A stretch of DNA of 58,169 nt, counting the filler, from Sluysia triapertura (taxonomy: Eukaryota): NCBI GenBank assembly GCA_046118255.1. It is 4 parts of 4 records of this genome, joined end to end, with 100 filler letters (N's around TTAATTAATTAA, not from the genome) between each part and the next. Parts side by side here need not be neighbours in the genome. Positions count along the whole stretch, not along the records: positions 25,610 to 43,105 come from JBJNIA010188387.1; 3 more parts are not named here. The stretch is one strand, 5' to 3'. How positions within the stretch are numbered: the stretch's first letter is position 1; the number at the start of each line of letters is the position of its first letter. The position numbers were made by a program, and so were the translations under genes. Shown here in pieces: positions 25,610-58,030 of the stretch. The notes under the pieces were generated by a model. That model saw only the letters and a list, made by a program, of their open reading frames with translations. It ran no database searches and was not told the origin of the DNA.

Positions 25610-28200
25610 AAAAAATCGACTGCTTACATCAAATCTTTACGAATCCAATTACCAATTTTGTTGTGCATAATTACAACAAGTAGTCAATATTATGGCATCA
25701 ATACGTTATGTAGTGAATGCACAAATATGTTTACAAGATTCATTGTGCAATTTCGAACAATTCGTAAAATAGTATCGCATCATCGTTCATCCGAATTATT
25801 GAAAATTCTGAAACGCATTCTAGCGGTTATACACAAAAAGATGGTACTAAGCTGTTTTGTATTGATTTTATGGAATTAAACAAAATTACTAGAAGAGATG
25901 TTTTTCCGTTATCAAGAATTGATGAGATATTAGATAAATTATGAAACGCAATTTTCTTTACTACATTAGATTTACACAGTGGTTAATGGCAGATGGAAAT
26001 AGCTGAAAAAGATAAACACTAAACTGCACTCACTTGTGGAGATGAATTATTCGAATGCGAAAATATGCCCTTCGCTTTAACAGGAGCATCGGCAACATTC
26101 CAACGCTATATGAATTTCGTTCTTTCGGGTTAGAAGAATGTAATGGTTTATATTGATGACATTATAATATTTTCAAAGGATTTTGATACACGTTGCCGAT
26201 ATAGAAAATATTTTAAGATTACAAGTTGCTGGATTAAAAATTAGACCTACTAAGTATGCATGGCAGAAGAACAATTAGAATTTTTAGGACATATTGTATC
26301 AAAGAATGGGATAAACCAAATCCACGGAATATTGAGAAAGTAGTTATATTTCCACAACCTAATAATGTTGGCAAGTACAGAGTTTTTTTAGGTTTAGCTT
26401 ATTACTACCGTAGATTTGTTATAGATTTTGCTAAAATTGCACATCCGTTAAGAATTTTAACTAAGAAAGATGTCGAATTTAAAATAGCGAGATACACAAA
26501 TTACAGCATGTAATAACTTTAAAAAAGTTAATAACTGCACCAATTTTATTTTTTCCTGACATTAATAAACCTTTTATTTTAACTACCGATGAAAGTAATT
26601 GCGCAATAGGCACAATACTAAGTCAAAAAGATAGAGAAAACTTAGAAGGAGTAAGAGCATACTCCAGTAGAAGACTGAACAAAGCAGAAAGGAATTACTT
26701 GACAATAGAAAGAGAGTGTTTAGCAATCGTGTAAGTTTGTAAATTATTTCGTCATTATTATTATGATAAAAAGTATTTCTGTACACTGACTATAAGCCAC
26801 TAACTTATTTATACAATCATAGAGATGAAGTAAGTCGATTAAATAGGTGGTTCATTAAGTTATCCGAATTTGATATGGATATAATCTAGAAACCTGGCAC
26901 TCTAAATAATAGTACAGATTGTATGTCTCGACTGACGAATGTTAATATAAATTTTATTGATATCACGAATATATCGGGTAAGGCTGAAGATCCTAAAGAA
27001 ATAATAAAACATCAACATGATGATGAAGAAATTTCACTCGCTTTAGAACAACTTACTAAAAGGCAACATCAGTCCTAAACTGGCTGAAAAACTAACAATA
27101 ACAAATGGAGTTTTAAGATTTAAGAATTCCAAAGATCAATGGAGAACTCTAATTCCAAAATCCTTAGTCACTCCACTTCTCATACAATTTCAAGATGGAC
27201 AATTAGGTGGTCATCTTTCCAATAGAAAAACACTGTCACGAATAAAGGATAAATATTTGGATGGTATGGAAGCAGATATAAAGAAATGGTATTACGACTG
27301 TGTTGTTTGTGTCAAAATAAAAAAATTGCAGGTGTTAAAGTAAAGGTGTTAAATGAATACCTGTACAATTATCGCCAATGTAATTGACGGCTATGGATAT
27401 AATTGGTCCGTTGCCAGAAACTTTAAAAGGAAATAAATATATTTTAGTTTTCGCGGATTATTTAACTAAATGGCCAAAGGCTTACCCGATGCCCAAGCAA
27501 AAGGCCGAAACTGTAACTCAGATATTAGTTGAGAAAATTATAATAGATATGGAGCTCCAATAAAATTATTAACAGACCAGGTAGAAATTTTAGAAGTGAA
27601 ATCAGTTGATAAAATTTTTAACATAATAAGAATTTATACATCTCTTTACCATCTGCAAAGTGACGGTCATGTCGAAAGATTTAATGGAACTTTAACTAAC
27701 ATGTTACAATCGTTTCTAAATGATAGACAAACCGATTGAGATCTATGCATTGCTCCATATTTGTTCGCCTATAGAAGTTCTGTACATCCTACTACCAACT
27801 TTACACCTTTTTATTTAATGGACGGTAGACATATAAATATGCCAGTGAGAACTACTAACTTCGCAATACTTAGAAATTCCCGATTATGCTACAGTAATGT
27901 GCAAAAATCTACAAATTGCATGGAAACATGCTGGTTTACAAATAAGATACTTTCAAGAATCATATAAAGAAAGCTAAGGAGCATAATTTTAAAATAGGAG
28001 ATAAAGTTTTAATAGGTCACTCTCCTAAGCTTCACAAACCTTTTAAAGGACCATACGAAGTTGTCAAAACTACTTCAACTAATTTATATACTAAGGACCC
28101 TAACAAGATCTACTCGGAAACATTCGGTGTACATGTTAATCGATGTAAGTTAGCACCAAATAATGAATATAATTTAAGAAATAGGATTATTAATAAGACT
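25610..28200 (+). mobile_element. pol: Ty3/gypsy pol pseudogene: RT - RNase H - integrase - GPY/F
   Basis: FPLSRIDEILD, LDLHSG*WQ, MPFALTGASATFQR, VYIDDIIIFS, FLGLAYYYRRFV, AERNYLTIERECLAIV, GGH..KT, MDIIGPLP, DYLTKW, SDGHVERFN, KGPYEV; many stops and frameshifts. Confidence 0.97.
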
Positions 28201-28339
28201 GTGTTGAAAGTAATACCTAAGAAAAAAGATAGACAAGCCACATGTTATTCATTCATCAGTTGATAAGAAAATAATAATGATGTTAAATTCTTCACTGAAT
28301 TTAAATTTAATTTATCATATAACACGAAGCGTCCAGATA

Positions 28340-28866
28340 AATCGAAGATGGATTTGAGCTGTTTTTGATACTGGCGCGAGTAACTTATCGTTAATTACAA
28401 TATGTTAACTAATTTAGAAATTTTTATGATGCATCAACCAGCACTAACTTTCTGTAATGTCAACAATACTCCCTTTGACATAAATGGGTTATTACAATGT
28501 CAAATTACGATTTTAGATACGAATGTTTGTGCTCCAATACTAGTATGAGATAAATGTCCTTATGAAATAATTAATGGTTTATATGTAATCAAACATTTAT
28601 ATATAGTAATTCATAGAAGACGCGGATTTGTGGAAATACCAGTAGACTCACGCATAATTTTAGCGCAAGTGTTTCTCCCATCTATAGACGTTCAACCAAA
28701 TCCAACACAACAAGTGGTAGTACATGATTTTATAGCACCACATCACACGCATTTACCAGGTGTTCCTACACCAGACTTTATGGGGGATGAAGATGATTTT
28801 AATATTTTGTTGTTAATTATGAAAGAGCGTTGTATGATATACAATGAGTTTGAGGGCGTTAAATAA
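28340..28866 (+). pseudogene. Retropepsin-like aspartic protease ORF located downstream of integrase
   Basis: AVFDTGASNLSLI at 28358, then after a frameshift NVNNTPFDINGLLQCQITIL...ILV*DKCPYEIINGLYVIKHL (flap-like and ILG-like motifs); continues into ORF 28630-28866. Confidence 0.65.
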
Positions 28867-29360
28867 AAAAATGAAGAGAGATACAAACTGATTTTAAACC
28901 TTGAAAACTTATACTCGTTTTTGTTATTAAAATGTAACCACGTCTTATAAATCAAGATATGACATTTATGAATTACTTTGTGATACATTAAAGACATGAT
29001 TATCTTAAAAACATGCGTGTTTAAAATTGTAATTTCCGTTTATTCGTTCACATTGATTAAACTTCAATTTATTAATAGGTATTTTCGACAGTTTTTGACC
29101 AATCATATTTTAATACATAAATTTATTTTTATTTTTATAATTTTAATTTTATAATATTAATTCAAGAAAAATAATAATTTCAAAAATAAAAATTTAGTTT
29201 AACAATCATAATATTTTAATAAAATTATAAAATATTACTAATTTAAAAAAATTTTTAAATTTTATAAAATAAGTTCAATCAACAATTTAAAGTTTTCTTT
29301 ATTTTTTTTAAATTTTCTTTACATTCTTTTACATTTTTTACTACTTTTTATCTTTAAAAA

Positions 29361-29429
29361 GTAGTCGCTCTTTGGTAGAGCATTCGAACTGCATACATAA
29401 TGTCCCGGGTTCGATCTCCGGTCAGTCCA
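29361..29429 (+). tRNA. tRNA-Cys(GCA)-like pseudogene or SINE head
   Basis: tggtagagcattcga (A box), ctgca anticodon region, gtcccgggttcgatc (B box), then TTTT; acceptor stem does not pair. Confidence 0.65.
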
Positions 29430-30039
29430 TTTTATGAAGTCTAACAATAATATAAATATACATTTATTACAAAAATTGGATCTTTATAAAAATGATTATT
29501 TCTAACAAATGTTTTAAATTCTTTTCCATGTGGTGGCCCAACCTAATATCTTAAAATTTTAACTTAACAATACACATAATAACCAATATTCAATAATTAA
29601 TTCCTTTTATGATTCTGTAAAATTGTCAATATTTTCAAACATGTTACATTCAAAAGTTTATTACATTAAAATCTTATTCGACATCGAAAATCATCAAACG
29701 TACAAACTTTACTTAATCCAAAACATTTCAAGTTCACAATTCTCCACCACTCAATCATTAATATCATTGAAAAACAGTAAATTCACACCTCAAAATCATT
29801 TTTAACATTTCAATCAAAACAGAATTTCTTTTAATATCTATAACTGCGTGTCATTATTCTTTTACTTCTTCATAGGCTATTAAAAGATAATCAGACATAA
29901 TTAAAAGAATTCTATTTAAGAAAATTTTATTAGAAAGAAAAGAATCTGATTTATAAGAAGAAAGATTTATGCGTTTTAGTATAACTACCTCATTTATTCA
30001 TTTGTCACTTATTATCATTATCATTTTTATTTCTTGTAT

Positions 30040-30430
30040 ATTCAAAGGATTGTGTAAGAATTAAAAGGGAATAAAAAACTTTATGTATTATTTTTATTTT
30101 TCATTATTATTATTATTATCAACATTTTATTTCATTATCAATATCATTATCATTATTTTTATCATTTTTAGTTACACCATATGTTATGATAACTATTTAA
30201 CTATATTCAAAATAGATTTGTCTGCCACCATTTAATTACTAATTAATGAATTTTATAAACTTTATGGTGACATGCATACATTTGTACGTTGCTTTTACAC
30301 ACGACATTTTGATTGGCCATCAAATAATTTCTATTTTTGTTATATTTACATTGGATGCCCAACCATACCTAATTACACAAAACAATTAGTAGTTTAAAAA
30401 GCAGAAACACAAAAAGCAGACAAAAATTCA
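30040..30430 (+). promoter_or_regulatory. Left promoter cassette of element B
   Basis: aaaggattgtgtaag..ttatgtatt, (TAT)n, tctgccacc..ggtgacatg, tgattgg (30310), ttggatgcccaacc, aaaaagcaga x2. Confidence 0.65.
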
Positions 30431-30499
30431 TACATAAACAAGCCAATATAATTTACCAGACATACAGACGCATGCAGTGTAAAATTTTATTTCAAATGT

Positions 30500-31667
30500 A
30501 ATAAGTATAATTAGGACAATGCAAGAATTAGTTTAATGTAATTTTCAATAAACTAATTATATCAGTCTAATTTTAAAACAAATAATTATGTTGTTTCACA
30601 AATAATAAAAATTTTTGTAAAACAACATCGTCAAAAATTGAATTTTCATAGTGGATTTAAAAGTTAATTTCAAGAAAAATTATTTTTATTTTAAAAATGA
30701 ATTGGATATATTGTACATGTAGGTATAAAATTTCTCTCTCGATGAAAAACTGTAAAGCTTATTCAACTAATAAATCAATGTTAAATGTACAAGAAGTTAC
30801 CGTTCTAGCTCATCCTTGTTTTTGTATTAACGATGAAGTTGCTAATTTTAATTCTAAATTGATATCCCCTTTTGGGCATTTCCTAAGTATAAAAATAGGA
30901 GTACATCTAATGATTATATTTGTGATGGTAATGTGCACATGAAAAAGCAATGTTCTACGACAAACGACGTTGTGCAAGTTGCATGCATTTTGAGTATTCT
31001 TTCGATCATTTACACCCTATTAGAAGTTGTAAAAGTTTTGTGATGAATAAAGTGCACAATATAAAATCTGACGATATGAAAAATCAATGTATTTAAGAGT
31101 GAATTTTTCAAGAATAATGCTAACGAAAATAAATACCACAAGGCAGCACTTTTCTTATACCAATTAACAGAAACAGGTGAATGTTCCAGATATGTTAGAA
31201 ATTGAAAGTATTCTCATGGATCTTTCAAATTACAATGTGCTATTTATTGCACGTCAAATGCTAGTGACCACCATAAAAGAATACGAATCTTATTATCAAG
31301 TTCAGGAATCAGATCATACTTAGAAAAACCATCCAGAAAGGACGTTATAATTATCAATGATCATCAAATTAGCAATTCATCCGGTCATGTAATTCATGAC
31401 ATACCAGAAGTAATTAATTACTTATCTTTGTTTTTTCTTGATCATGACTATTTTATATGTTCAATTTTACTTAGAAAATTTTATGAATTTATCTGTGACA
31501 TTTTCAGAAAAATTAAGACAATTTCAACAATTTGTAAAAAATTCAAATTTCACAAAGTTTTAATTAATATATTTATAGAGAAATGTTGTGTTTGTGGTTT
31601 TGTTAAATCAAAATGGTTAAGAGTTGTAACATATTTTGAGCGTTTAGATCGATTTGGAGAAAAATAG
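30500..31667 (+). pseudogene. Left cargo gene of element B, Cys-containing, disrupted
   Basis: ORF pieces 30697-30942 and 31428-31667 with coding-like sequence between them, directly downstream of the cassette. Confidence 0.45.
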
Positions 31668-32480
31668 TGTTGATGCTGTGCGAGTTTTTGAATGGACCGA
31701 TTACTTATTAGATGGCCTATGAAGAATTGTTTAGGCGTTGAGGCGTAATGTTGCATGTGTTTACTAAAGATCGAAGTGTTCAAGGATCTTACTTCGTTTA
31801 GCGGATTTTTAACCCGACTTTCAATGGCTATTACGTCATTAATAATTTTAACCTCTGTGTCGTCCTCAAGTAATTTAACTATCTGCATTCGGTACTTGAT
31901 TCGATGAGGAGTTTTATTTAACCTATATTCACTATCTAACTTGGTGCTATTTTTATTTATGTTATTATCAGAATAAGGTGAATTTACTATTGCTGCGTTT
32001 ATTTTACAATTTAAAGCTAAGTTGTAATAATAAAACTGTTTATCAGAAACATTTATTAAGACTTTATTACTATTTAAAGTTAAGTTATAATAATAAAAGC
32101 GTTTATTTGAAACATTTATTAAGACTTTATTAATATTTATGAAACACAAAATATCGACAGGACTCCGGCTCAACTGTATCTGCTTCTCCACGAACCCGAG
32201 CATGTTGCATATAGATCTGTAAATAAAATAATAAAAGACACAATATATAACATGGTTAGAATAAGTAGTAATATCGAAATTGATAGTTATATAACAAAAG
32301 TTAAATTCGTTACCTCGTTTAATGCTGCTTGTATGGACTGCGTCAACTGTGTTGCATTTATTTCGGTTTGGTCTGGTTACACATGCTAAATACATTACAT
32401 CGATTGGCCGCTGCTTCTGAGAGATTGGGTAGAAAAGTTTTGCGTCCAATAGGAGATAATGGAAAAAGAAGAGTAACTGA
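31550..32480 (-). CDS. Inner minus-strand cargo gene of element B with an in-frame 21-aa duplication
   Basis: 346-codon open frame whose N-terminal part is low-complexity; NKVLINVS.K.FYYYNL.LN occurs twice. Confidence 0.55.
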
Positions 32481-33559
32481 ATTGAGATATTCTTGTGCTT
32501 CAGTTTGGATATCGTTATAATTATAATAATAATTATTTGGTTATTATTATTACTTACGATTTTATGACAATATGATTTACAATTAAACACTTATTTGTGA
32601 TAGTTAATGATTTGTAATTTTGTGATATCGAATATGTAATTTTAGTTAAATTTTATTTCCACTTTTTGCTTTAATTTTGAGATGCATAATTAAGATTTTT
32701 ATAAAGAAGAAACAATATTAAAGTCAAAATATGGAATATTGCTAAGTATTTTTTTTAAATAAAAAAATAATTTTTAAATAAAATTATGTTTACGAATTAC
32801 ATCGATTCAAAATACTTCAATTAATTTTTCATAGTATTTTGAAAAAATGAAATTAAAAATTTATTAACTTTGATATATTTTATTAATTATGTGCATTAAA
32901 TGTATATTTAACAATAAATAAATCAATGACGATTAAAACACTTGCGGCATAAAGTTAATGTGCGCTTGATACTTTTTGTTAAAATTTAAATCAATAATGA
33001 TTTTATTCGTATTTTTGAAATTATGGCAATTCGGGAGTTTATAAAAAATATTAAACTTATACAACTTAGGTTTGATCAAGACCAAAAAAGTATTTCACAT
33101 TTAATTATAAATTCTAATTTTTGGGATATATGATACGGTCAAAAAATACATAATATTAAAAAAATATTTAATTAATTTTAAATTCTGATGTTTAATTCAT
33201 TAAAAATACCTCCAAATGATCCTTACTGAATTTGTTAAGTATTTTTAATATTTGAAGTATTAAATAAGGACTTATAATAATAATCCCATTATAACAATTT
33301 ATTTTTATTATGGCCAATTACACTATAAATTAGATTTTAAGTTTGTAAAGTGGTAGCATTATTGATTATTAATTCAACATTAATGTAATTTTTATTAACA
33401 TTACTAGGTCTAAATTTTTTTAAACCTTTACAAATATTATTTTTAAAATAATTATCCCGTTTTATGATTAAAATTTTATAAAAACTCAGAAAAAAGAAAT
33501 TAACAAATATAAATTTATTACTTTTTATTACAACGAAAAATTAAACTTTAATGTTATAT

Positions 33560-34470
33560 CGTTATACTTGTTATTGAGCCTTGACCTTGGTTGATTATCT
33601 AAAATAAAATGAACACTTAGATAATAGTTAGAATAAACAAAAAAATAATTACATTACGATGCTTGACGAACGGATAGTCAATTGTTCTAGTAGAAGATAC
33701 ATAATGTGTCCGACAAAACTTTGAACAGTGTAATAAAGTTGAATCGTTGTCACAACAATTATTGTCATTGTGAAGGTACTGTAAAGCTTGTAAAATTGGC
33801 GCCATTAATTTTAGATCTTTGAACAGTACACAATCCACCCATTTAATATTGTTTCTAAAAAATTAATTTTCAATAATCTAAGAACAGCTGTTGCTTTGCG
33901 CTTAAATACTTTTCGCATTATTTCTTCATACATATTATATAATTCACTAGTTCTGAAATCATCATCTTTATTAATATTCATTTGAATTAATGTATTATCA
34001 CTTCTTTCCTCTCTAAACATATTTTCTACAAATAATCTAGAATCGAAAATTATAAAATATCTCGTTAAAACGATTGTTATTAGTAACCGAGCTTGATCTT
34101 TGATAAATAATAAATAATTTCTATATATATCAATTAGATACGATGATTCAAAACTATTAATTTGAAACCATTTTCTTATCCATTCTAAAACTGGAACTAT
34201 ATATTTCGAATTGCATATAGGAGTTGGATAACGTCGTTCCGTACTATTAAAAATGACATATTTGAATTCGTTATTGTCAGTTGATACTAAATAAAACTTC
34301 AATAGAATATCATAGTGTGTTTCACATAACCTTTTAATTTCATTTACTAATTGACAAAATGATACAATTAATTCGATTTTTTAATTAAGTCTGGAATTAT
34401 ACTTTAATTTTTTATCCATTTAATTTTGCGTTAGTTAATCCAATTCTTTCACAATCTTCTTAAGAGCATT
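33560..34470 (-). pseudogene. Right cargo gene of element B, disrupted, with a probable small last exon
   Basis: ATG near 34469, ORFs 33811-34302 and 33617-33838, intron-like gtaatt...ttttag at ~33655-33598. Confidence 0.5.
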
Positions 34471-34554
34471 TTTCCGTTTTTGTATCAATACTATGTAAAA
34501 ATTGAATTGAATAGCTGTACAATTATTGAGTCACCAAAATTTCACACACTTACT

Positions 34555-34840
34555 TTTATTTATTTATAAGATGACCATTGATTGGTCGACTAATATTGGT
34601 AATAAAAATTTAGTGTAAAACAAAATTGATTGAGTGAAGAGCCATCATCGGTATTGACAGAAATGTATTTACAATGATGATAATAATAATAATAAGGTAC
34701 AATTTTTATAATTGAATAAAATTATAAAATTTAATGTTACTAATAACAACAATAATGTTGCTGTTATTATTAACACTAATTAAATGCAAAATACATAAAT
34801 TCCTTGTACATTCCACAAGAACTTTCTTTCTTTTTCTTTA
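34555..34840 (-). promoter_or_regulatory. Right promoter cassette of element B
   Basis: On the minus strand: aaagag..gtggaatg..tttatgtattttgca, (AAT/TAT)n, tgtcaataccgatgatggc, accaat..gaccaatcaatgg, ttataaata. Confidence 0.6.
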
Positions 34841-36899
34841 ATTTCTAACACATTTTGAATAAATTAAAGTAAATAATGATAGAATTGAGTATAACAACAA
34901 AATGTTATTATAAATGCATAATTTCTTGTATTTTTGAACATGATCTTGCTTTTGATACTTTATTAATTCTTAACATATTTTAAATCTAATTGAAGTAAAA
35001 AATGATAAATTTGAATGCAGTAACAACAATAATAAGATACACGATGTTATAGTTATTGTAGTTATTGCATTGCATAAACATGAATTCTTTAAAACTGTAC
35101 ACGAACTTCCTTTGAATCGTTAGAATTCTAAATATATTGTAATGAGCTTAAATATATTTGAAGCTAAAATCTTTCGACAAGGATTAGTTTACATGAATTT
35201 ATATGTTTGATTAACGTTTCGAGGTATGTTAATAGTTTTATGTCGTTTAGTGAAACAGAGAATGTTAGAATAGATTTTTAAATGGTGGTTTAAGTTCTTG
35301 ATTGAGGACGACACTTGATTATTGGAAAATCGTGAATTAAAGACCTATTAAGAAAAGTTTGGTTTAATAAATGTGAAAAGGTAAATTATAGAACAACTCC
35401 TATTATATTTGGAAGGTTATTGTGCATTATTATACGTGATTTGTTTTCTTGTTGCTTTAAATGTTATTATCTTTTGTGTTGTTAGTGGTTATGTAATGAT
35501 AAATGATGGATTTAAGGTGTTGTAATTGATTCGAAGGTATGGAATGGGTAATTTCGAATATAGTTGTTGTTTGGTTGTTATGAATGTAGAGTAACATGTT
35601 TTAGGTGGATTTGTTGGTGTAAATTGGTAATATTGGGTGTAATTGTGATTTGTATGTTGTGGAATTGTGAGTATGAATTGATTTTAGTAGGTAAACTGTT
35701 TTGTAAGTATATAGGAGATAGATGTATGAATGTTAGAGTGTTAAAAAAATATATATTAATTTTTAATAAAATTTTTATGGTTGTGAATGTTGGCCACGAC
35801 AAAGATCCAAAAGGAATTTATTCGGCTTGGTGATGTGGCAGAAATGTTTTTAAAATGCTTCAACTGATTTAATTTTTCATATTTTGTATTTCAGAGAAAG
35901 TTTTTTATTCAGTTATGTACTGTGTTGTACGATGTTTACATTTATATCCCACATTTTCATTCGTTAAATTTTAAAACAGGATTCAAAATTAATTTGTGTC
36001 TGTTTTTTATCCAATTTAAGATTTTAGAACGAAGATTTCAAGCCGAAATTAAAAAAGATGATGTGGTTTGTACAAAAAGATTTTTGTTTTACTCAATCAG
36101 TTGAATCAATATATTTCAATATTTTTCAAATTTCGAATATATCATCACGTTTCGTTTGTAGTTCAGATCACAAAATTTAGAAGTAGATAAGCATATTATC
36201 ACGCTACATTCAGAGTCAGATATCAGTAATTCACCAAGGAATAAGCAATGTGAATCAGAGTAGTTGCCATTATCAGAGAAGTCACAAAGATAGCCAAAAT
36301 TATCAATGATTTAAAAATCGACATGATAGCCATTTCTTGTCGTGAACTCACTTTTCGTCAGTGATCAAGCACTTGATAAAGTAACACAAAATTTAGTAAA
36401 GCCTTATAAACGAGCTGCAACGCTTAAAAACAAAAAATTCCAAATTGAGTCAAGGTGGCACCTAAGTTATCATCATATTTTTAATCAGAACAGTCACAGA
36501 TTTTAGTTCTTTTTGAAAATTTTTAAAATACTAAATTTAAATGTGTTGTGTGAAAGTAGACGATATTCAGAACTAAGTCGAACTGAGTATAAAACTCGAC
36601 ATTGTAGGTTCATTCTCTAAATCGTCAGACGTACTCACCATATGCCCACTATGGTGTGTTCCACACCGGTTCAAGATGACTCGTATTCAAGATTGTTTAT
36701 GTAATGGGTTACTCTCCATTCGTGGGATAGTGGGATAGTAATGGGTTAACCCGACCTATTACCATTATATATAGTGATGTTGGGTTTGTCTAGTTCGTGA
36801 ATATAAAAAGGTTATAAGGTTAGAGAATTAAAATATGTAAGAAAAAGTGATAAAAATATGTGAAACATGGAAATATGAATATAATTAAATATTGCTGAA

Positions 36900-38045
36900 G
36901 CAAGAATGATGAAGAAGGAAATGTTTATAGTCATTTGGAAATCGAATAATATCTTGGAGTTCCAAAGACTTGTGGGATATTAAGACCATTACAAGGGATT
37001 AGGAAGGGTTTGGTAAGATGTTTTAAAATATGGAAATACCTGGGAACTTCTGAGACCTTGATCTTTTGGAACATTTGAAGACCTTCGAGTAACTTTGTAA
37101 AACACCCATGGGCTTTTGAGATATTCAAGTAACTTTGTAAAATGTTTGAAATCTTTAAAATGTCCAACAATTAAAATTATGGTTAATAATAAATTTGATA
37201 CATTAAAAAAGAACGTTAAAAAGTAGAAAAAGAATCAGATATCTGAAGGTGAAGCCCTGCATATCTTATAAAGTATCTAAAACTTTATAACCATAGTAAA
37301 ACCGTTAAACATAAAATTAAGTTAAATTAAAATAATTAGTTAACTTAATTAAGAAAAATTACATTTGTATGAATAACTTTTGAATGCGAAATGCTATTTT
37401 AAAAATGTTACTGTGTACGTATTTGTTTTAAAGAGGTCTTCCGATGAAGATAAGATTTGGCAGAATTCATGCGAGAAAATCTTCTCTATTGAACAAAGTT
37501 GAATTTTAATTAAGTTTCAGTTTAAAATATTGAATTTTTTTATTTAAAATGATGAAAAGAAAATGAATTGAATATGAAATGATTGCTATGAAAGAGAAGA
37601 ATCCAAAAATGAGATTGAAATATTTGTAAAATTGTTTGTTTGGGAATGAGAACTTTAAACATTTTCCATTAGAAAATTGAGTGATAGGAATTGAAAATTA
37701 ATTGAAGTCTAAAAACTAAAGTTAAATTCATCATTTTTGAATATGTTGATAATAATAATTGTTATCTTCTAACAATAAATCAAGTAAAGTAGAAGAAAAT
37801 AAAGGTCGGCTGTTAATAGAACATTTATGTTCCGTTTGACAAGTCATACCATGTAATTTTCAAAATTGTTAGGGTCGTTCTAATCTTTAAAAGATGTTCT
37901 GATGATTTGTTTAGAAATATTTTTGATTGAGTTTGGGTATGATTGATTAACACAAAAGTATGAAAGGAAACACTTAAAGAATTTTATCACAACAACAAAC
38001 CAAATGACATTATTCGGAAAGAAAATCCATGCTTGGGTAATGCTT
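36900..38045 (-). pseudogene. Family 'X' (copy 3) with short-period repeat tail
   Basis: Colinear with 9000-9480 and with the reverse complement of 16485-17090; the tail also resembles 47300-47430. Confidence 0.6.
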
Positions 38046-38071
38046 TTAATTTTATTTTTAAGTTTTAAATA

Positions 38072-38262
38072 CAGTGGACGCTCTATATAAGCAACTCCTG
38101 TGAACCAGTTTTTATAATCATTAAATATTGAATTATAAAAACAATTATTATACTATTTTTAAATTTATTAGCCATTGTCATATGAGTTTTTTCCTAAAAA
38201 GTATAAACCTAAGTCAACAATCTCTATTCAAAAATTAAGTTGCTTATATAGAGCGTTCACTG
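38072..38262. mobile_element. Tc1/mariner-pogo-type MITE, 191 bp
   Basis: TIR CAGTGGACGCTCTATATAAGCAACT / AGTTGCTTATATAGAGCGTTCACTG (24/25), TA on both sides. Confidence 0.93.
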
Positions 38263-38349
38263 TATATTCTAACAGTTACACAAAACATTCATTTTATTTC
38301 AAAATATTAACTTGTAAGGCTTTTATTCTTTATTAGTTTTAACTTTAAT

Positions 38350-57544: not shown

Positions 57545-58030
57545 TGAAATCTGCTTTTTTGATTACAAGCCGAAATATTGTCTGGATTTAAAATTTTTAC
57601 TTGTCTGGATTTTTAATTGTGAAAAGAAAATTGGGAATGAATGTGCTATTTTTTGTATACCCAATCAGAGTATTTTAAGTATATTGAAAATTATCTGTGC
57701 TCTGATTGGGCGATAACAAAAATTAATTTTTAAAATAGATTGAGAGACCAACTACCGTGATGGGTATTGTCATTTTAATGGCAGATTTAAAAAGCACAAT
57801 CATCACTAATGAAGGTAGTAACTATTTTAATGTGTTGAATTAAGAATTGATGAAAGCATCAAGTATGACTAACAACGAGAATAATAAAAATGATGATGAT
57901 AATAATAATAATAATAGTAAGAACAACAATAATAACAATAATAATATTGTTATTATTGTGATCTGTAAATAAAATTGCATAAATAATCTTTAAGCTTTTT
58001 ACACGATCTTTTTCTTTTTGTTCTTTAAAG
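57545..58030 (-). promoter_or_regulatory. Promoter cassette of copy D (terminus predicted beyond the window)
   Basis: gaaaaagatcgtgtaa..ttatgcaattt, (TAT)n, tctgccatt..tgacaa, 11-bp inverted CCAAT pair 57660-57670/57700-57710, aaaaaagcaga. Confidence 0.75.

What the first reader, a model, noticed from the sequence alone, without database searches (positions are those of the whole stretch)
29529..35801. Family of TGT...ACA-ended cargo elements with a promoter at each end, convergent variable genes and no recognisable transposase
Seen: five ends share the terminus TGT(A/G/C)GTG(G/T)CC(C)AAC (9694+, 13595-, 29529+, 35801-, 57199-). Each is followed inward by 300-600 nt that is nearly free of G on that strand. 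Twice the ends form inverted pairs (3.9 kb across a gap; 6.27 kb gap-free) enclosing 3 or more genes read inward from both ends. Two more cassettes without visible termini occur at 38350 and 57545-58030. Cargo differs between copies (pseudokinase-like, Asp-rich repeat, Cys-containing, 302-aa ORF). I see no transposase, integrase, polymerase, helicase or capsid motif inside them. Established: TG...CA ends are substrates of retroviral-type DDE integrases (LTR elements, Ginger DNA transposons). Inference: these are non-autonomous gene-shuttling elements mobilised in trans by a Ginger- or gypsy-type integrase, or integrated segments of a multipartite linear DNA virus or polydnavirus-like system. 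I do not recognise this architecture as a described family.
Basis: partly seen in the sequence, partly recalled or inferred. Interest (0 to 1): 0.92.

Follow-up and report, generated by a model that had tools for sequence, protein, structure and literature searches.

The report
Mirror-ended DNA unit with G-poor arms
A 6.3-kb stretch of a very AT-rich eukaryotic genome is bounded by two mirrored 13-letter end motifs, each followed inward by an unusually G-poor arm, and carries reading frames with no known relatives; it looks like a decayed non-autonomous mobile element, but movement is not shown and the two ends could be separate repeat copies.

Summary
The sequence features are real in this piece. 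Two mirrored ends, TGTGGTGGCCCAAC at 29529 (+) and TGTCGTGGCCAAC at 35801 (-), were found where about 0.001 is expected by chance. Each borders one of the two most strand-skewed stretches of the piece.

I found a further mirrored landmark: a repeat block of about 125-170 nt lies in both arms and once more at 38311-38659.

Inside the unit, three reading frames are longer than chance allows (346, 189 and 153 codons). They converge on each other. None has a relative among billions of proteins, and none has a Pfam domain. No transposase, integrase, polymerase or capsid domain is present.

Four points count against a clean transposon. The arms do not align beyond 13 nt. There is no target-site duplication. 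"Promoters" cannot be verified. The neighbourhood is a graveyard of transposable elements, with a broken Ty3/gypsy pol next door.

My best reading (0.4) is a decayed non-autonomous element with integrase-type TGTNR ends. The rivals are two independent repeat or LTR-type ends, or shared promoter-leader modules of host genes. A virus or polydnavirus origin has no support. The genome-wide family claim could not be tested here. Interest is moderate.

The parts
29529..29542 (+). Left end motif TGTGGTGGCCCAAC (fits TGTNR)
29543..29846 (+). Left G-depleted arm (13 G, 57 C in 304 nt). Read inward, the predicted RNA is almost structure-free.
29985..30175 (+). Weak left copy of the inner repeat block, followed by a (TTA)n tract; no hairpin
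   Evidence: (7 of 500 shuffles reach the score)
31206..31667 (+). 153-codon open frame without any ATG. It runs tail-to-tail into the 346-codon frame.
   Evidence: no Pfam hit
31550..32590 (-). 346-codon ORF (281 codons from the first ATG) with an in-frame 63-nt tandem duplication; orphan
   Evidence: shuffle maximum 121-140; duplication; no relative; model pLDDT 29
32591..33619 (.). AT-rich spacer (about 18% GC) without an ORF
33620..34380 (-). ORF region: a 189-codon and an 81-codon open frame that overlap in different frames. Whether they are one gene or two is unknown. Orphan.
   Evidence: weak non-significant DB-module hit
34543..34900 (-). Inner repeat block, best copy, with a 12-bp hairpin
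   Evidence: (score 74 against a shuffle maximum of 45)
34901..35150 (-). Two further diverged tandem units (about 125 nt each) of the first part of the block
   Evidence: (E 0.013 and 0.018)
35190..35788 (-). Right G-depleted arm on the minus strand (25 G and 137 C in 599 nt; 7 and 86 in the outer 349 nt)
35789..35801 (-). Right end motif TGTCGTGGCCAAC (fits TGTNR)
38311..38659 (+). Third copy of the inner block, outside the unit, with a 16-bp hairpin. It has no end motif and no G-poor arm upstream.

Best explanation
The interval 29529-35801 is one unit with mirrored ends. Each end is an 'arm module' built, from outside to inside, of:
- a 13-nt TGTNR-type end motif;
- 0.3-0.6 kb of A/C-rich, G-depleted sequence;
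- one to three copies of a repeat of about 125 nt.

The two arms enclose about 4 kb that carries three convergent open frames with no relatives.

The most likely nature is a decayed non-autonomous DNA element of the kind cut and joined at TG...CA ends by a retroviral-type DDE integrase or transposase supplied in trans. This would resemble Ginger or IS481EU non-autonomous families. It also shares the 'short TIR plus long non-homologous subterminal region' architecture of Ac/Ds-type elements.

Shown:
- the motif pair;
- the mirrored skew;
- the mirrored inner block;
- open frames longer than chance;
- the absence of any catalytic domain.

Inferred:
- the two ends belong together;
- the unit was once inserted as a whole;
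- the arms, whose inward transcripts would be nearly free of secondary structure, serve as leaders or regulatory regions for the cargo.

Not shown: any movement, any partner enzyme, any transcript.
For: - Motif pair: 2 found against about 0.001 expected.
- The two motifs sit exactly at the outer edges of the two strongest skew zones of the piece, with mirrored polarity.
- Predicted RNA structure of the inward strands is -4.8 and -2.1 kcal per 100 nt. Across 98 background windows the mean is -15.3 (sd 3.4) and the weakest is -8.9. The opposite strands of the arms are ordinary.
- The inner block is present in both arms facing inward. The right copy scores 74 against a shuffle maximum of 45. The left copy is weak (7 of 500 shuffles reach its score).
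- ORFs of 346, 189 and 153 codons exceed every shuffle of their regions or of the whole unit.
- Both ends fit TGTNR, the end rule of Ginger elements and gypsy LTRs (PMC2836005). TGT...ACA ends with TIRs under 50 bp are described for IS481EU (PMC10045372).
- No catalytic domain lies inside, which is consistent with non-autonomy.
Against: - No target-site duplication of 2-10 bp at or near the ends. The best 15-16-bp direct repeat in the flanks is not above chance.
- The arms cannot be aligned beyond 13 nt and share no enriched short words. They are therefore not ordinary TIRs.
- The inner block also occurs alone at 38311-38659, without end motif or G-poor arm, so it may be an independent small repeat.
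- A convergent orientation of two independent copies has a prior of 1 in 4.
- No second copy, empty site or autonomous partner could be examined. The source genome is not in the collections searched.
- Weak similarity continues about 12 nt outside the proposed ends (p about 0.03), so TGT may not be the true boundary.
Confidence: 0.4

Rival explanations
1. The two ends are independent copies of the 5' part of one repeat family that happen to face each other in a TE-dense region. Examples would be old LTRs or LTR-plus-leader fragments of a gypsy-type or non-autonomous LTR element. In a variant of this reading the 12-nt core of the motif, which starts with TGG, is a tRNA primer-binding site, the G-poor stretch is the untranslated leader, and the LTRs lie outside the reader's interval.
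For: - TGTNR is also the start of gypsy LTRs.
- A broken Ty3/gypsy pol lies 1.3 kb to the left on the same strand.
- The inner block exists alone elsewhere.
- The tandem repeats in the right arm resemble repeated enhancer units of an LTR U3 region (my inference).
- Weak similarity extends just outside both motifs.
Against: - No direct repeat of LTR size anywhere in the piece.
- No LTR 3' end with a matching TSD.
- No purine-rich tract before either end.
- No gag or pol remnant inside.
- The outward flanks are not alignable over 100-200 nt.
- Two LTRs of one family would normally align.
Confidence: 0.25
2. The arm modules are not mobile at all. They are the shared regulatory region and unstructured 5' leader of a fast-evolving host gene family, such as lineage-specific secreted or orphan genes. 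In such a family the upstream part stays recognisable while the coding part diverges. The 6.3 kb would then simply be two or three neighbouring convergent genes.
For: - Conservation of composition rather than sequence in the arms fits a functional constraint such as an unstructured leader.
- The inner block lies upstream of three different downstream ORF regions: the left plus-strand ORFs, the 189-codon frame, and the Asp-rich array at 38874.
- There is no TSD.
- The ORFs are intact although the arms are highly diverged.
Against: - The distance from the end motif to the first long ORF is 1.1-1.4 kb, which is long for a leader.
- The downstream ORFs share no similarity.
- The third block has no motif or G-poor stretch.
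- The compositional boundary at the right motif is abrupt, as at an insertion edge.
- The surroundings are dead TEs, not genes.
Confidence: 0.2
3. An integrated segment of a linear DNA virus, an ambisense parvovirus-like genome, or a polydnavirus-like proviral segment.
For: Only the geometry: about 6 kb, mirrored ends, and convergent frames.
Against: - No viral or replication domain in any frame.
- No relative of the 346- or 189-codon products in 5.8 billion or 1.84 billion protein sets, which include viral proteins, or in the PDB.
- The ends are not homologous hairpin ITRs.
- There are no direct-repeat junctions as in polydnavirus segments.
Confidence: 0.05

Closest known systems
Ginger1 / Ginger2 (TDD) DNA transposons and their non-autonomous copies (PMC2836005)
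   Same: TGTNR...YNACA ends shared with gypsy LTRs. Sizes of 2.6-7 kb. Non-autonomous copies keep only the ends. They occur in AT-rich animal and protist genomes.
   Different: Ginger TIRs are 40-270 bp and alignable, whereas here only 13 nt align. Ginger makes 4-bp (or 5-bp) TSDs, and none is seen here. No integrase-like transposase copy is available. G-depleted arms are not described for Ginger.
IS481EU and its non-autonomous families in parabasalids (PMC10045372)
   Same: TGT...ACA or TNT...AYA ends. TIRs mostly under 50 bp. Non-autonomous families exist without a known partner.
   Different: TSDs of about 4, 15 or 25 bp are expected. The best 15-mer flank match here (12 of 15) is at chance level. 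The host lineage is unknown. No DDD/E transposase is present.
Ac/Ds-type (hAT) and CACTA architecture (my own knowledge)
   Same: A very short imperfect TIR plus several hundred bp of subterminal sequence. The subterminal regions differ between the two ends and may carry repeated units. Non-autonomous members have unrelated interiors.
   Different: The end motifs and TSD lengths differ (8 bp and 3 bp). No shared short subterminal word was found here. This is a likeness of design only, not of membership.
Solo or 5' LTRs of Ty3/gypsy retrotransposons
   Same: TGTNR start, repeated units inside, and a gypsy pol remnant next door.
   Different: No direct LTR pair, no identifiable LTR 3' end or TSD, no PPT, and no gag-pol inside.
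Gene-carrying non-autonomous elements such as Pack-MULEs (my own knowledge)
   Same: Conserved ends with differing captured or orphan content.
   Different: Pack-MULE TIRs are long and homologous, with 9-10-bp TSDs. The cargo there is recognisable host gene fragments, whereas here the frames have no relatives.

Membership tests
Ginger1/Ginger2 DNA transposons | Ends follow TGTNR...YNACA | tested here: met
   TGTGG at 29529 (+) and TGTCG at 35801 (-). Rule taken from PMC2836005.
Ginger1/Ginger2 DNA transposons | Alignable TIRs of about 40-270 bp | tested here: not met
   Local alignment of 650-nt arms scores 28 against a shuffle mean of 29.5. Only 13 nt match.
Ginger1/Ginger2 DNA transposons | 4-bp (TDD-4/5: 5-bp) target-site duplication | tested here: not met
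   The flanks are TCCA and AAGA. The only 4-mer match needs a shifted boundary and is expected by chance.
Ginger1/Ginger2 DNA transposons | Gypsy-integrase-like transposase, or an autonomous copy with the same ends | not testable with these tools
   None lies inside the unit. The rest of the genome is not available.
IS481EU | TGT...ACA ends with TIRs mostly under 50 bp | tested here: met
   13-nt imperfect TIR with TGT/ACA ends. Rule from PMC10045372.
IS481EU | TSDs of about 4, 15-16 or 24-25 bp | tested here: inconclusive
   The best 15-mer is 12 of 15 at shifted boundaries, and 91 of 300 shuffles do as well. The longest exact match is 9 nt, reached in 14-19% of controls.
Ty3/gypsy LTR retrotransposon (full, solo LTR, or LTR plus PBS) | Two LTRs in direct orientation | tested here: not met
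   No direct repeat longer than 73 nt in the piece, apart from the coding-repeat array.
Ty3/gypsy LTR retrotransposon (full, solo LTR, or LTR plus PBS) | LTR 3' end ...CA followed by the same 4-6-bp TSD as before the 5' end | tested here: not met
   No CA plus 5- or 6-mer flank match within 2.5 kb of either end. There are single 4-mer matches only.
Ty3/gypsy LTR retrotransposon (full, solo LTR, or LTR plus PBS) | gag/pol between the ends | tested here: not met
   57 ORFs of 38 aa or more inside the unit have no RT, RNase H, protease, integrase or gag family.
Ty3/gypsy LTR retrotransposon (full, solo LTR, or LTR plus PBS) | Primer-binding site complementary to a host tRNA 3' end | not testable with these tools
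   The motif core begins with TGG, but no tRNA gene is in the piece and the host tRNA set is not available.
DIRS-like retroelements | Homologous inverted terminal repeats plus RT and tyrosine recombinase | tested here: not met
   The arms are not homologous. No RT or recombinase domain is present. The absence of a TSD would fit.
Ambisense parvovirus-like endogenous element | NS1-type helicase and capsid genes between hairpin ITRs | tested here: not met
   No such Pfam family. The ends are not palindromic hairpins.
Polydnavirus proviral segment | Segment bounded by direct repeat junctions, with known segment gene families | tested here: not met
   The ends are inverted, not direct. No known domain family occurs in the frames.

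The most novel reading that the evidence does not exclude
A eukaryotic family of mobile 'expression cassettes'. The ends would be defined only by a 13-nt integrase-type motif. Each end would carry its own regulatory region and a G-free, structure-free leader that drives lineage-specific cargo genes inward. A trans-acting integrase that needs no long TIR would move the cassettes. The architecture would be closer in logic to integron cassettes or packaged proviral segments than to any described transposon superfamily.
Probability: 0.1. Interest if true: 0.8.

Novelty: new variant of a known kind. Interest (0 to 1): 0.35.

Why it matters
If the mirrored ends truly delimit a mobile unit, this would be a non-autonomous element with three unusual properties:
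- it is recognised through a very short integrase-type end;
- its subterminal arms are conserved in base composition (G-free, unstructured as RNA) rather than in sequence;
- it carries intact orphan reading frames.

Such an element could be a vehicle for spreading or creating lineage-specific genes in an AT-rich genome.

If instead the ends are independent repeat fragments or gene leaders, the finding is an ordinary unclassified repeat. It would still be a useful annotation landmark: a motif plus a skew signature that can be searched genome-wide.

Tried and rejected
1. Bacterial-type promoter and terminator scan: at chance level and uninformative.
2. tRNA and Rfam scans of the piece and of the unit at relaxed thresholds: nothing. 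The tRNA-like stretch at 29355-29430 is not recognised as a tRNA.
3. Ciliate or other genetic codes: with only TGA as a stop, all frames open up in this composition, so the test does not discriminate.
4. Homology searches for the 346- and 189-codon products found none: word-indexed search of 5.8 billion proteins, full HMMER against 1.84 billion representatives, and the PDB.
5. Single-sequence structure models had pLDDT 29 and 43. They were unusable, so no fold search was run.
6. Attempts to reach the source genome: exact-protein look-ups and a metagenome scan with the MITE inverted repeat found nothing. The RNase H fragment found only one anonymous metagenome contig, so the host lineage stays unknown.
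7. Paralogy among all 261 ORFs of the piece: none.
8. Shared subterminal words in the arms: none beyond composition.
9. G-to-A hypermutation as the cause of the G-poor arms: rejected. C is raised and T lowered as much as A is raised, and hypermutation would not destroy alignability.
10. Long TSDs (15-25 bp): not above chance.
11. Literature search for the end motifs and the MITE repeat as text: no relevant paper.
12. My by-eye calls of a gag-like stretch (about 40700-41120) and a protease-like DTGAS stretch (about 28360) were not confirmed by Pfam.

For searching I built a profile HMM from two window copies of the inner block in /scratch.


Full report
**Scope.** Only the piece 25610-43105 was available (17,496 bases, no N). 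The piece is very AT-rich (26.5% GC, 18-34% in 500-nt windows). It has no tRNA or Rfam family and few long ORFs in the standard code. It looks like repeat-rich eukaryotic DNA. The host could not be identified: exact look-ups of ten window ORFs, a contig look-up and a metagenome scan with a MITE repeat all failed.

**The ends.**
- The left end reads TGTGGTGGCCCAAC at 29529-29542 (+).
- The right end reads TGTCGTGGCCAAC on the minus strand at 35801-35789.
The expected count is 0.0007 analytically, and 0 of 3000 Markov shuffles gave two matches.
- The pattern was defined after the fact. Even so, a second hit has a chance of about one in a thousand.
- The interval is 6273 bp.
- Both ends satisfy TGTNR, the rule described for Ginger transposons and gypsy LTRs (PMC2836005).

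**The arms.**
- Reading inward, the left arm 29543-29846 has 13 G and 57 C in 304 nt.
- The right arm has 7 G and 86 C in its outer 349 nt, and 25 G and 137 C over 599 nt.
- In a 200-nt scan these are the two strongest skew zones of the piece, and each begins right at a motif.
- At the right end the composition returns to normal within a few bases outside the motif. At the left end the outside is so AT-poor in G+C that the edge is less sharp.
- The bias is amino/keto (A+C against G+T), not a simple loss of G. It therefore does not look like G-to-A hypermutation.
- The inward transcripts would be almost free of secondary structure. Predicted values are -4.8 and -2.1 kcal per 100 nt. Across 98 background windows the mean is -15.3 (sd 3.4) and none is weaker than -8.9. 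The opposite strands of the arms are ordinary.
- The arms share composition only. A local alignment of 650 nt from each end scores no better than shuffles, with or without the terminal motif. They share no enriched 5-7-mers.

- The core of about 170 nt scores 74 against a shuffle mean of 29 and a maximum of 45.
- In the right arm, two more diverged tandem units of about 125 nt lie just outside it (nhmmer E 0.013 and 0.018).
- A weak copy lies in the left arm at about 29985-30175, facing inward. Its score is 44, reached by 7 of 500 shuffles.
- The right and third copies carry a 12-16-bp hairpin (z -3.7 and -5.2). The left copy has none.
- Each arm can therefore be described as motif, then G-poor stretch, then repeat unit(s), with the two arms mirrored.
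- The third copy has no motif and no G-poor stretch upstream. Homology does not extend beyond the block in either direction.

**The interior.**
- Three open frames are longer than any shuffle of their surroundings allows:
  - 346 codons on the minus strand (31550-32590), with an in-frame 63-nt tandem duplication;
  - 189 codons on the minus strand, within 33620-34380, followed by an overlapping 81-codon frame;
  - 153 codons on the plus strand (31206-31667), without any ATG.
- The plus-strand frame and the 346-codon frame meet tail to tail, so 'convergent' is a fair description. 'Three or more genes from both ends' is generous.
- None of the 57 frames of 38 aa or more has a significant Pfam domain.
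- The 346-codon product has no relative in the word-indexed set of 5.8 billion proteins, among 1.84 billion representatives read by HMMER, or in the PDB.
- The 189-codon product also has no relative.
- Single-sequence structure models were useless (pLDDT 29 and 43), so no fold search was run.
- The frames of the piece show no paralogy with each other.
- 'A promoter at each end' cannot be tested with sequence alone. The only scan available is bacterial and at chance level.

**Insertion signatures.**
- There is no direct repeat of 2-10 bp at or near the ends. The one 4-mer match needs a shifted boundary, and about two such matches are expected by chance.
- Longer duplications of the IS481EU type were also sought. 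The best 15-mer is 12 of 15 and the longest exact match is 9 nt. Both are reached in 14-30% of controls.
- A solo-LTR model also fails: no '...CA' followed by the same 5-6-mer as the upstream flank occurs within 2.5 kb of either end.
- No LTR-sized direct repeat exists in the piece.
- Weak similarity continues about 12 nt outside both motifs (p about 0.03), so TGT is not certainly the true edge.

**Neighbourhood.**
- To the left (25610-28260, plus strand, cut by the edge of the piece) lies a Ty3/gypsy-type pol remnant.
- Its RNase H (E 2e-21), integrase zinc-binding (E 2e-9), integrase core and C-terminal SH3-like parts follow in that order.
- It is broken into at least ten reading-frame pieces in all three frames. 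That means at least nine breaks, a mixture of stops and frameshifts. I could not split the count further because no intact relative was available.
- It is dead, and its own LTRs could not be identified. It therefore gives no evidence on who might move the unit.
- Between it and the left end lie an extremely AT-rich tract and a tRNA-like stretch that neither ARAGORN nor Rfam accepts.
- To the right lie a Tc1/mariner-type MITE, the third block, an Asp-rich coding-repeat array with a 90-nt period interrupted several times, and more unclassifiable sequence.

**Interpretation.**
- The mirrored motif, skew and inner block make it more likely than not that the arm module is a real repeated entity.
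- The single-unit reading is reasonable: a decayed non-autonomous element with integrase-type ends, in an Ac/Ds-like 'short TIR plus long non-homologous subterminal region' design. I put it at 0.4.
- It fails two defining tests for Ginger (TIR length and TSD). It is inconclusive for IS481EU. It is therefore not filed under either.
- Rival 1 (0.25): two independent 5' fragments of one repeat family, LTR or LTR-leader, with the motif core possibly a primer-binding site.
- Rival 2 (0.2): shared regulatory or leader modules of fast-evolving host genes.
- Rival 3 (0.05): a viral or polydnavirus-like origin. This has only geometry in its favour.
- The remainder covers chance and things I have not thought of.

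**Literature.** The Ginger paper (PMC2836005) and the IS481EU paper (PMC10045372) supplied the family definitions used in the membership table. Text searches for the motifs themselves found nothing relevant.

**Limits and declarations.**
- The family-wide claim (five ends, two pairs, differing cargo) could not be tested.
- I did not scan the public viral-contig collection by pattern or protein (see referred steps).
- A profile HMM of two window copies of the inner block was built in /scratch for searching.

Noticed in passing
window 25610-28260 (+): Degraded Ty3/gypsy-type pol with the order RT (by eye), RNase H, integrase zinc finger, integrase core, SH3-like C-terminus. It is cut by the edge of the piece and broken at least nine times by stops and frameshifts.
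   Followed up: partly
window 29355-29430 (+): tRNA-like stretch with D-loop-like and T-arm-like parts, about 100 nt outside the left end. ARAGORN and Rfam do not accept it. It may be a tRNA-derived SINE head or a pseudogene.
   Followed up: partly
window 38069-38265: Small Tc1/mariner-type MITE with 28-nt inverted repeats (27 of 28 complementary), TA on both sides and 141 nt between the arms. It sits 60 nt upstream of the third copy of the inner block. Its repeat was not found in the metagenome collection.
   Followed up: partly
window 38874-39430 (+): Asp/Lys/Asn-rich coding-like array with a period of about 90 nt (66% self-identity at offset 90), interrupted several times by stops or frame changes. 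It has no Pfam family.
   Followed up: partly
window 32004-32139 (-): A 63-nt tandem duplication (2.2 copies, 89% identical) that stays in frame inside the 346-codon ORF, giving a repeated 21-residue segment.
   Followed up: no
window 38529-38597: A second, 17-bp-stem palindrome just downstream of the third block. Part of the surrounding sequence has a counterpart downstream of the right-arm block.
   Followed up: no
window 28360-28860 (+) and 40700-41120 (+): By eye, a protease-like DTGAS stretch and a gag-like stretch. Neither was confirmed by Pfam. They may be remnants of further retroelements.
   Followed up: partly
window 35100-43105: Positive GC skew on the plus strand persists over most of the right 8 kb of the piece, not only in the right arm. 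No explanation was sought.
   Followed up: no
window 29505-29519 and 35840-35854: A direct repeat of about 15 nt (12 of 15, with a 9-nt exact core) in the outer flanks, 10 and 39 nt outside the proposed ends. It is not above chance but is worth re-checking if other copies show long duplications.
   Followed up: yes
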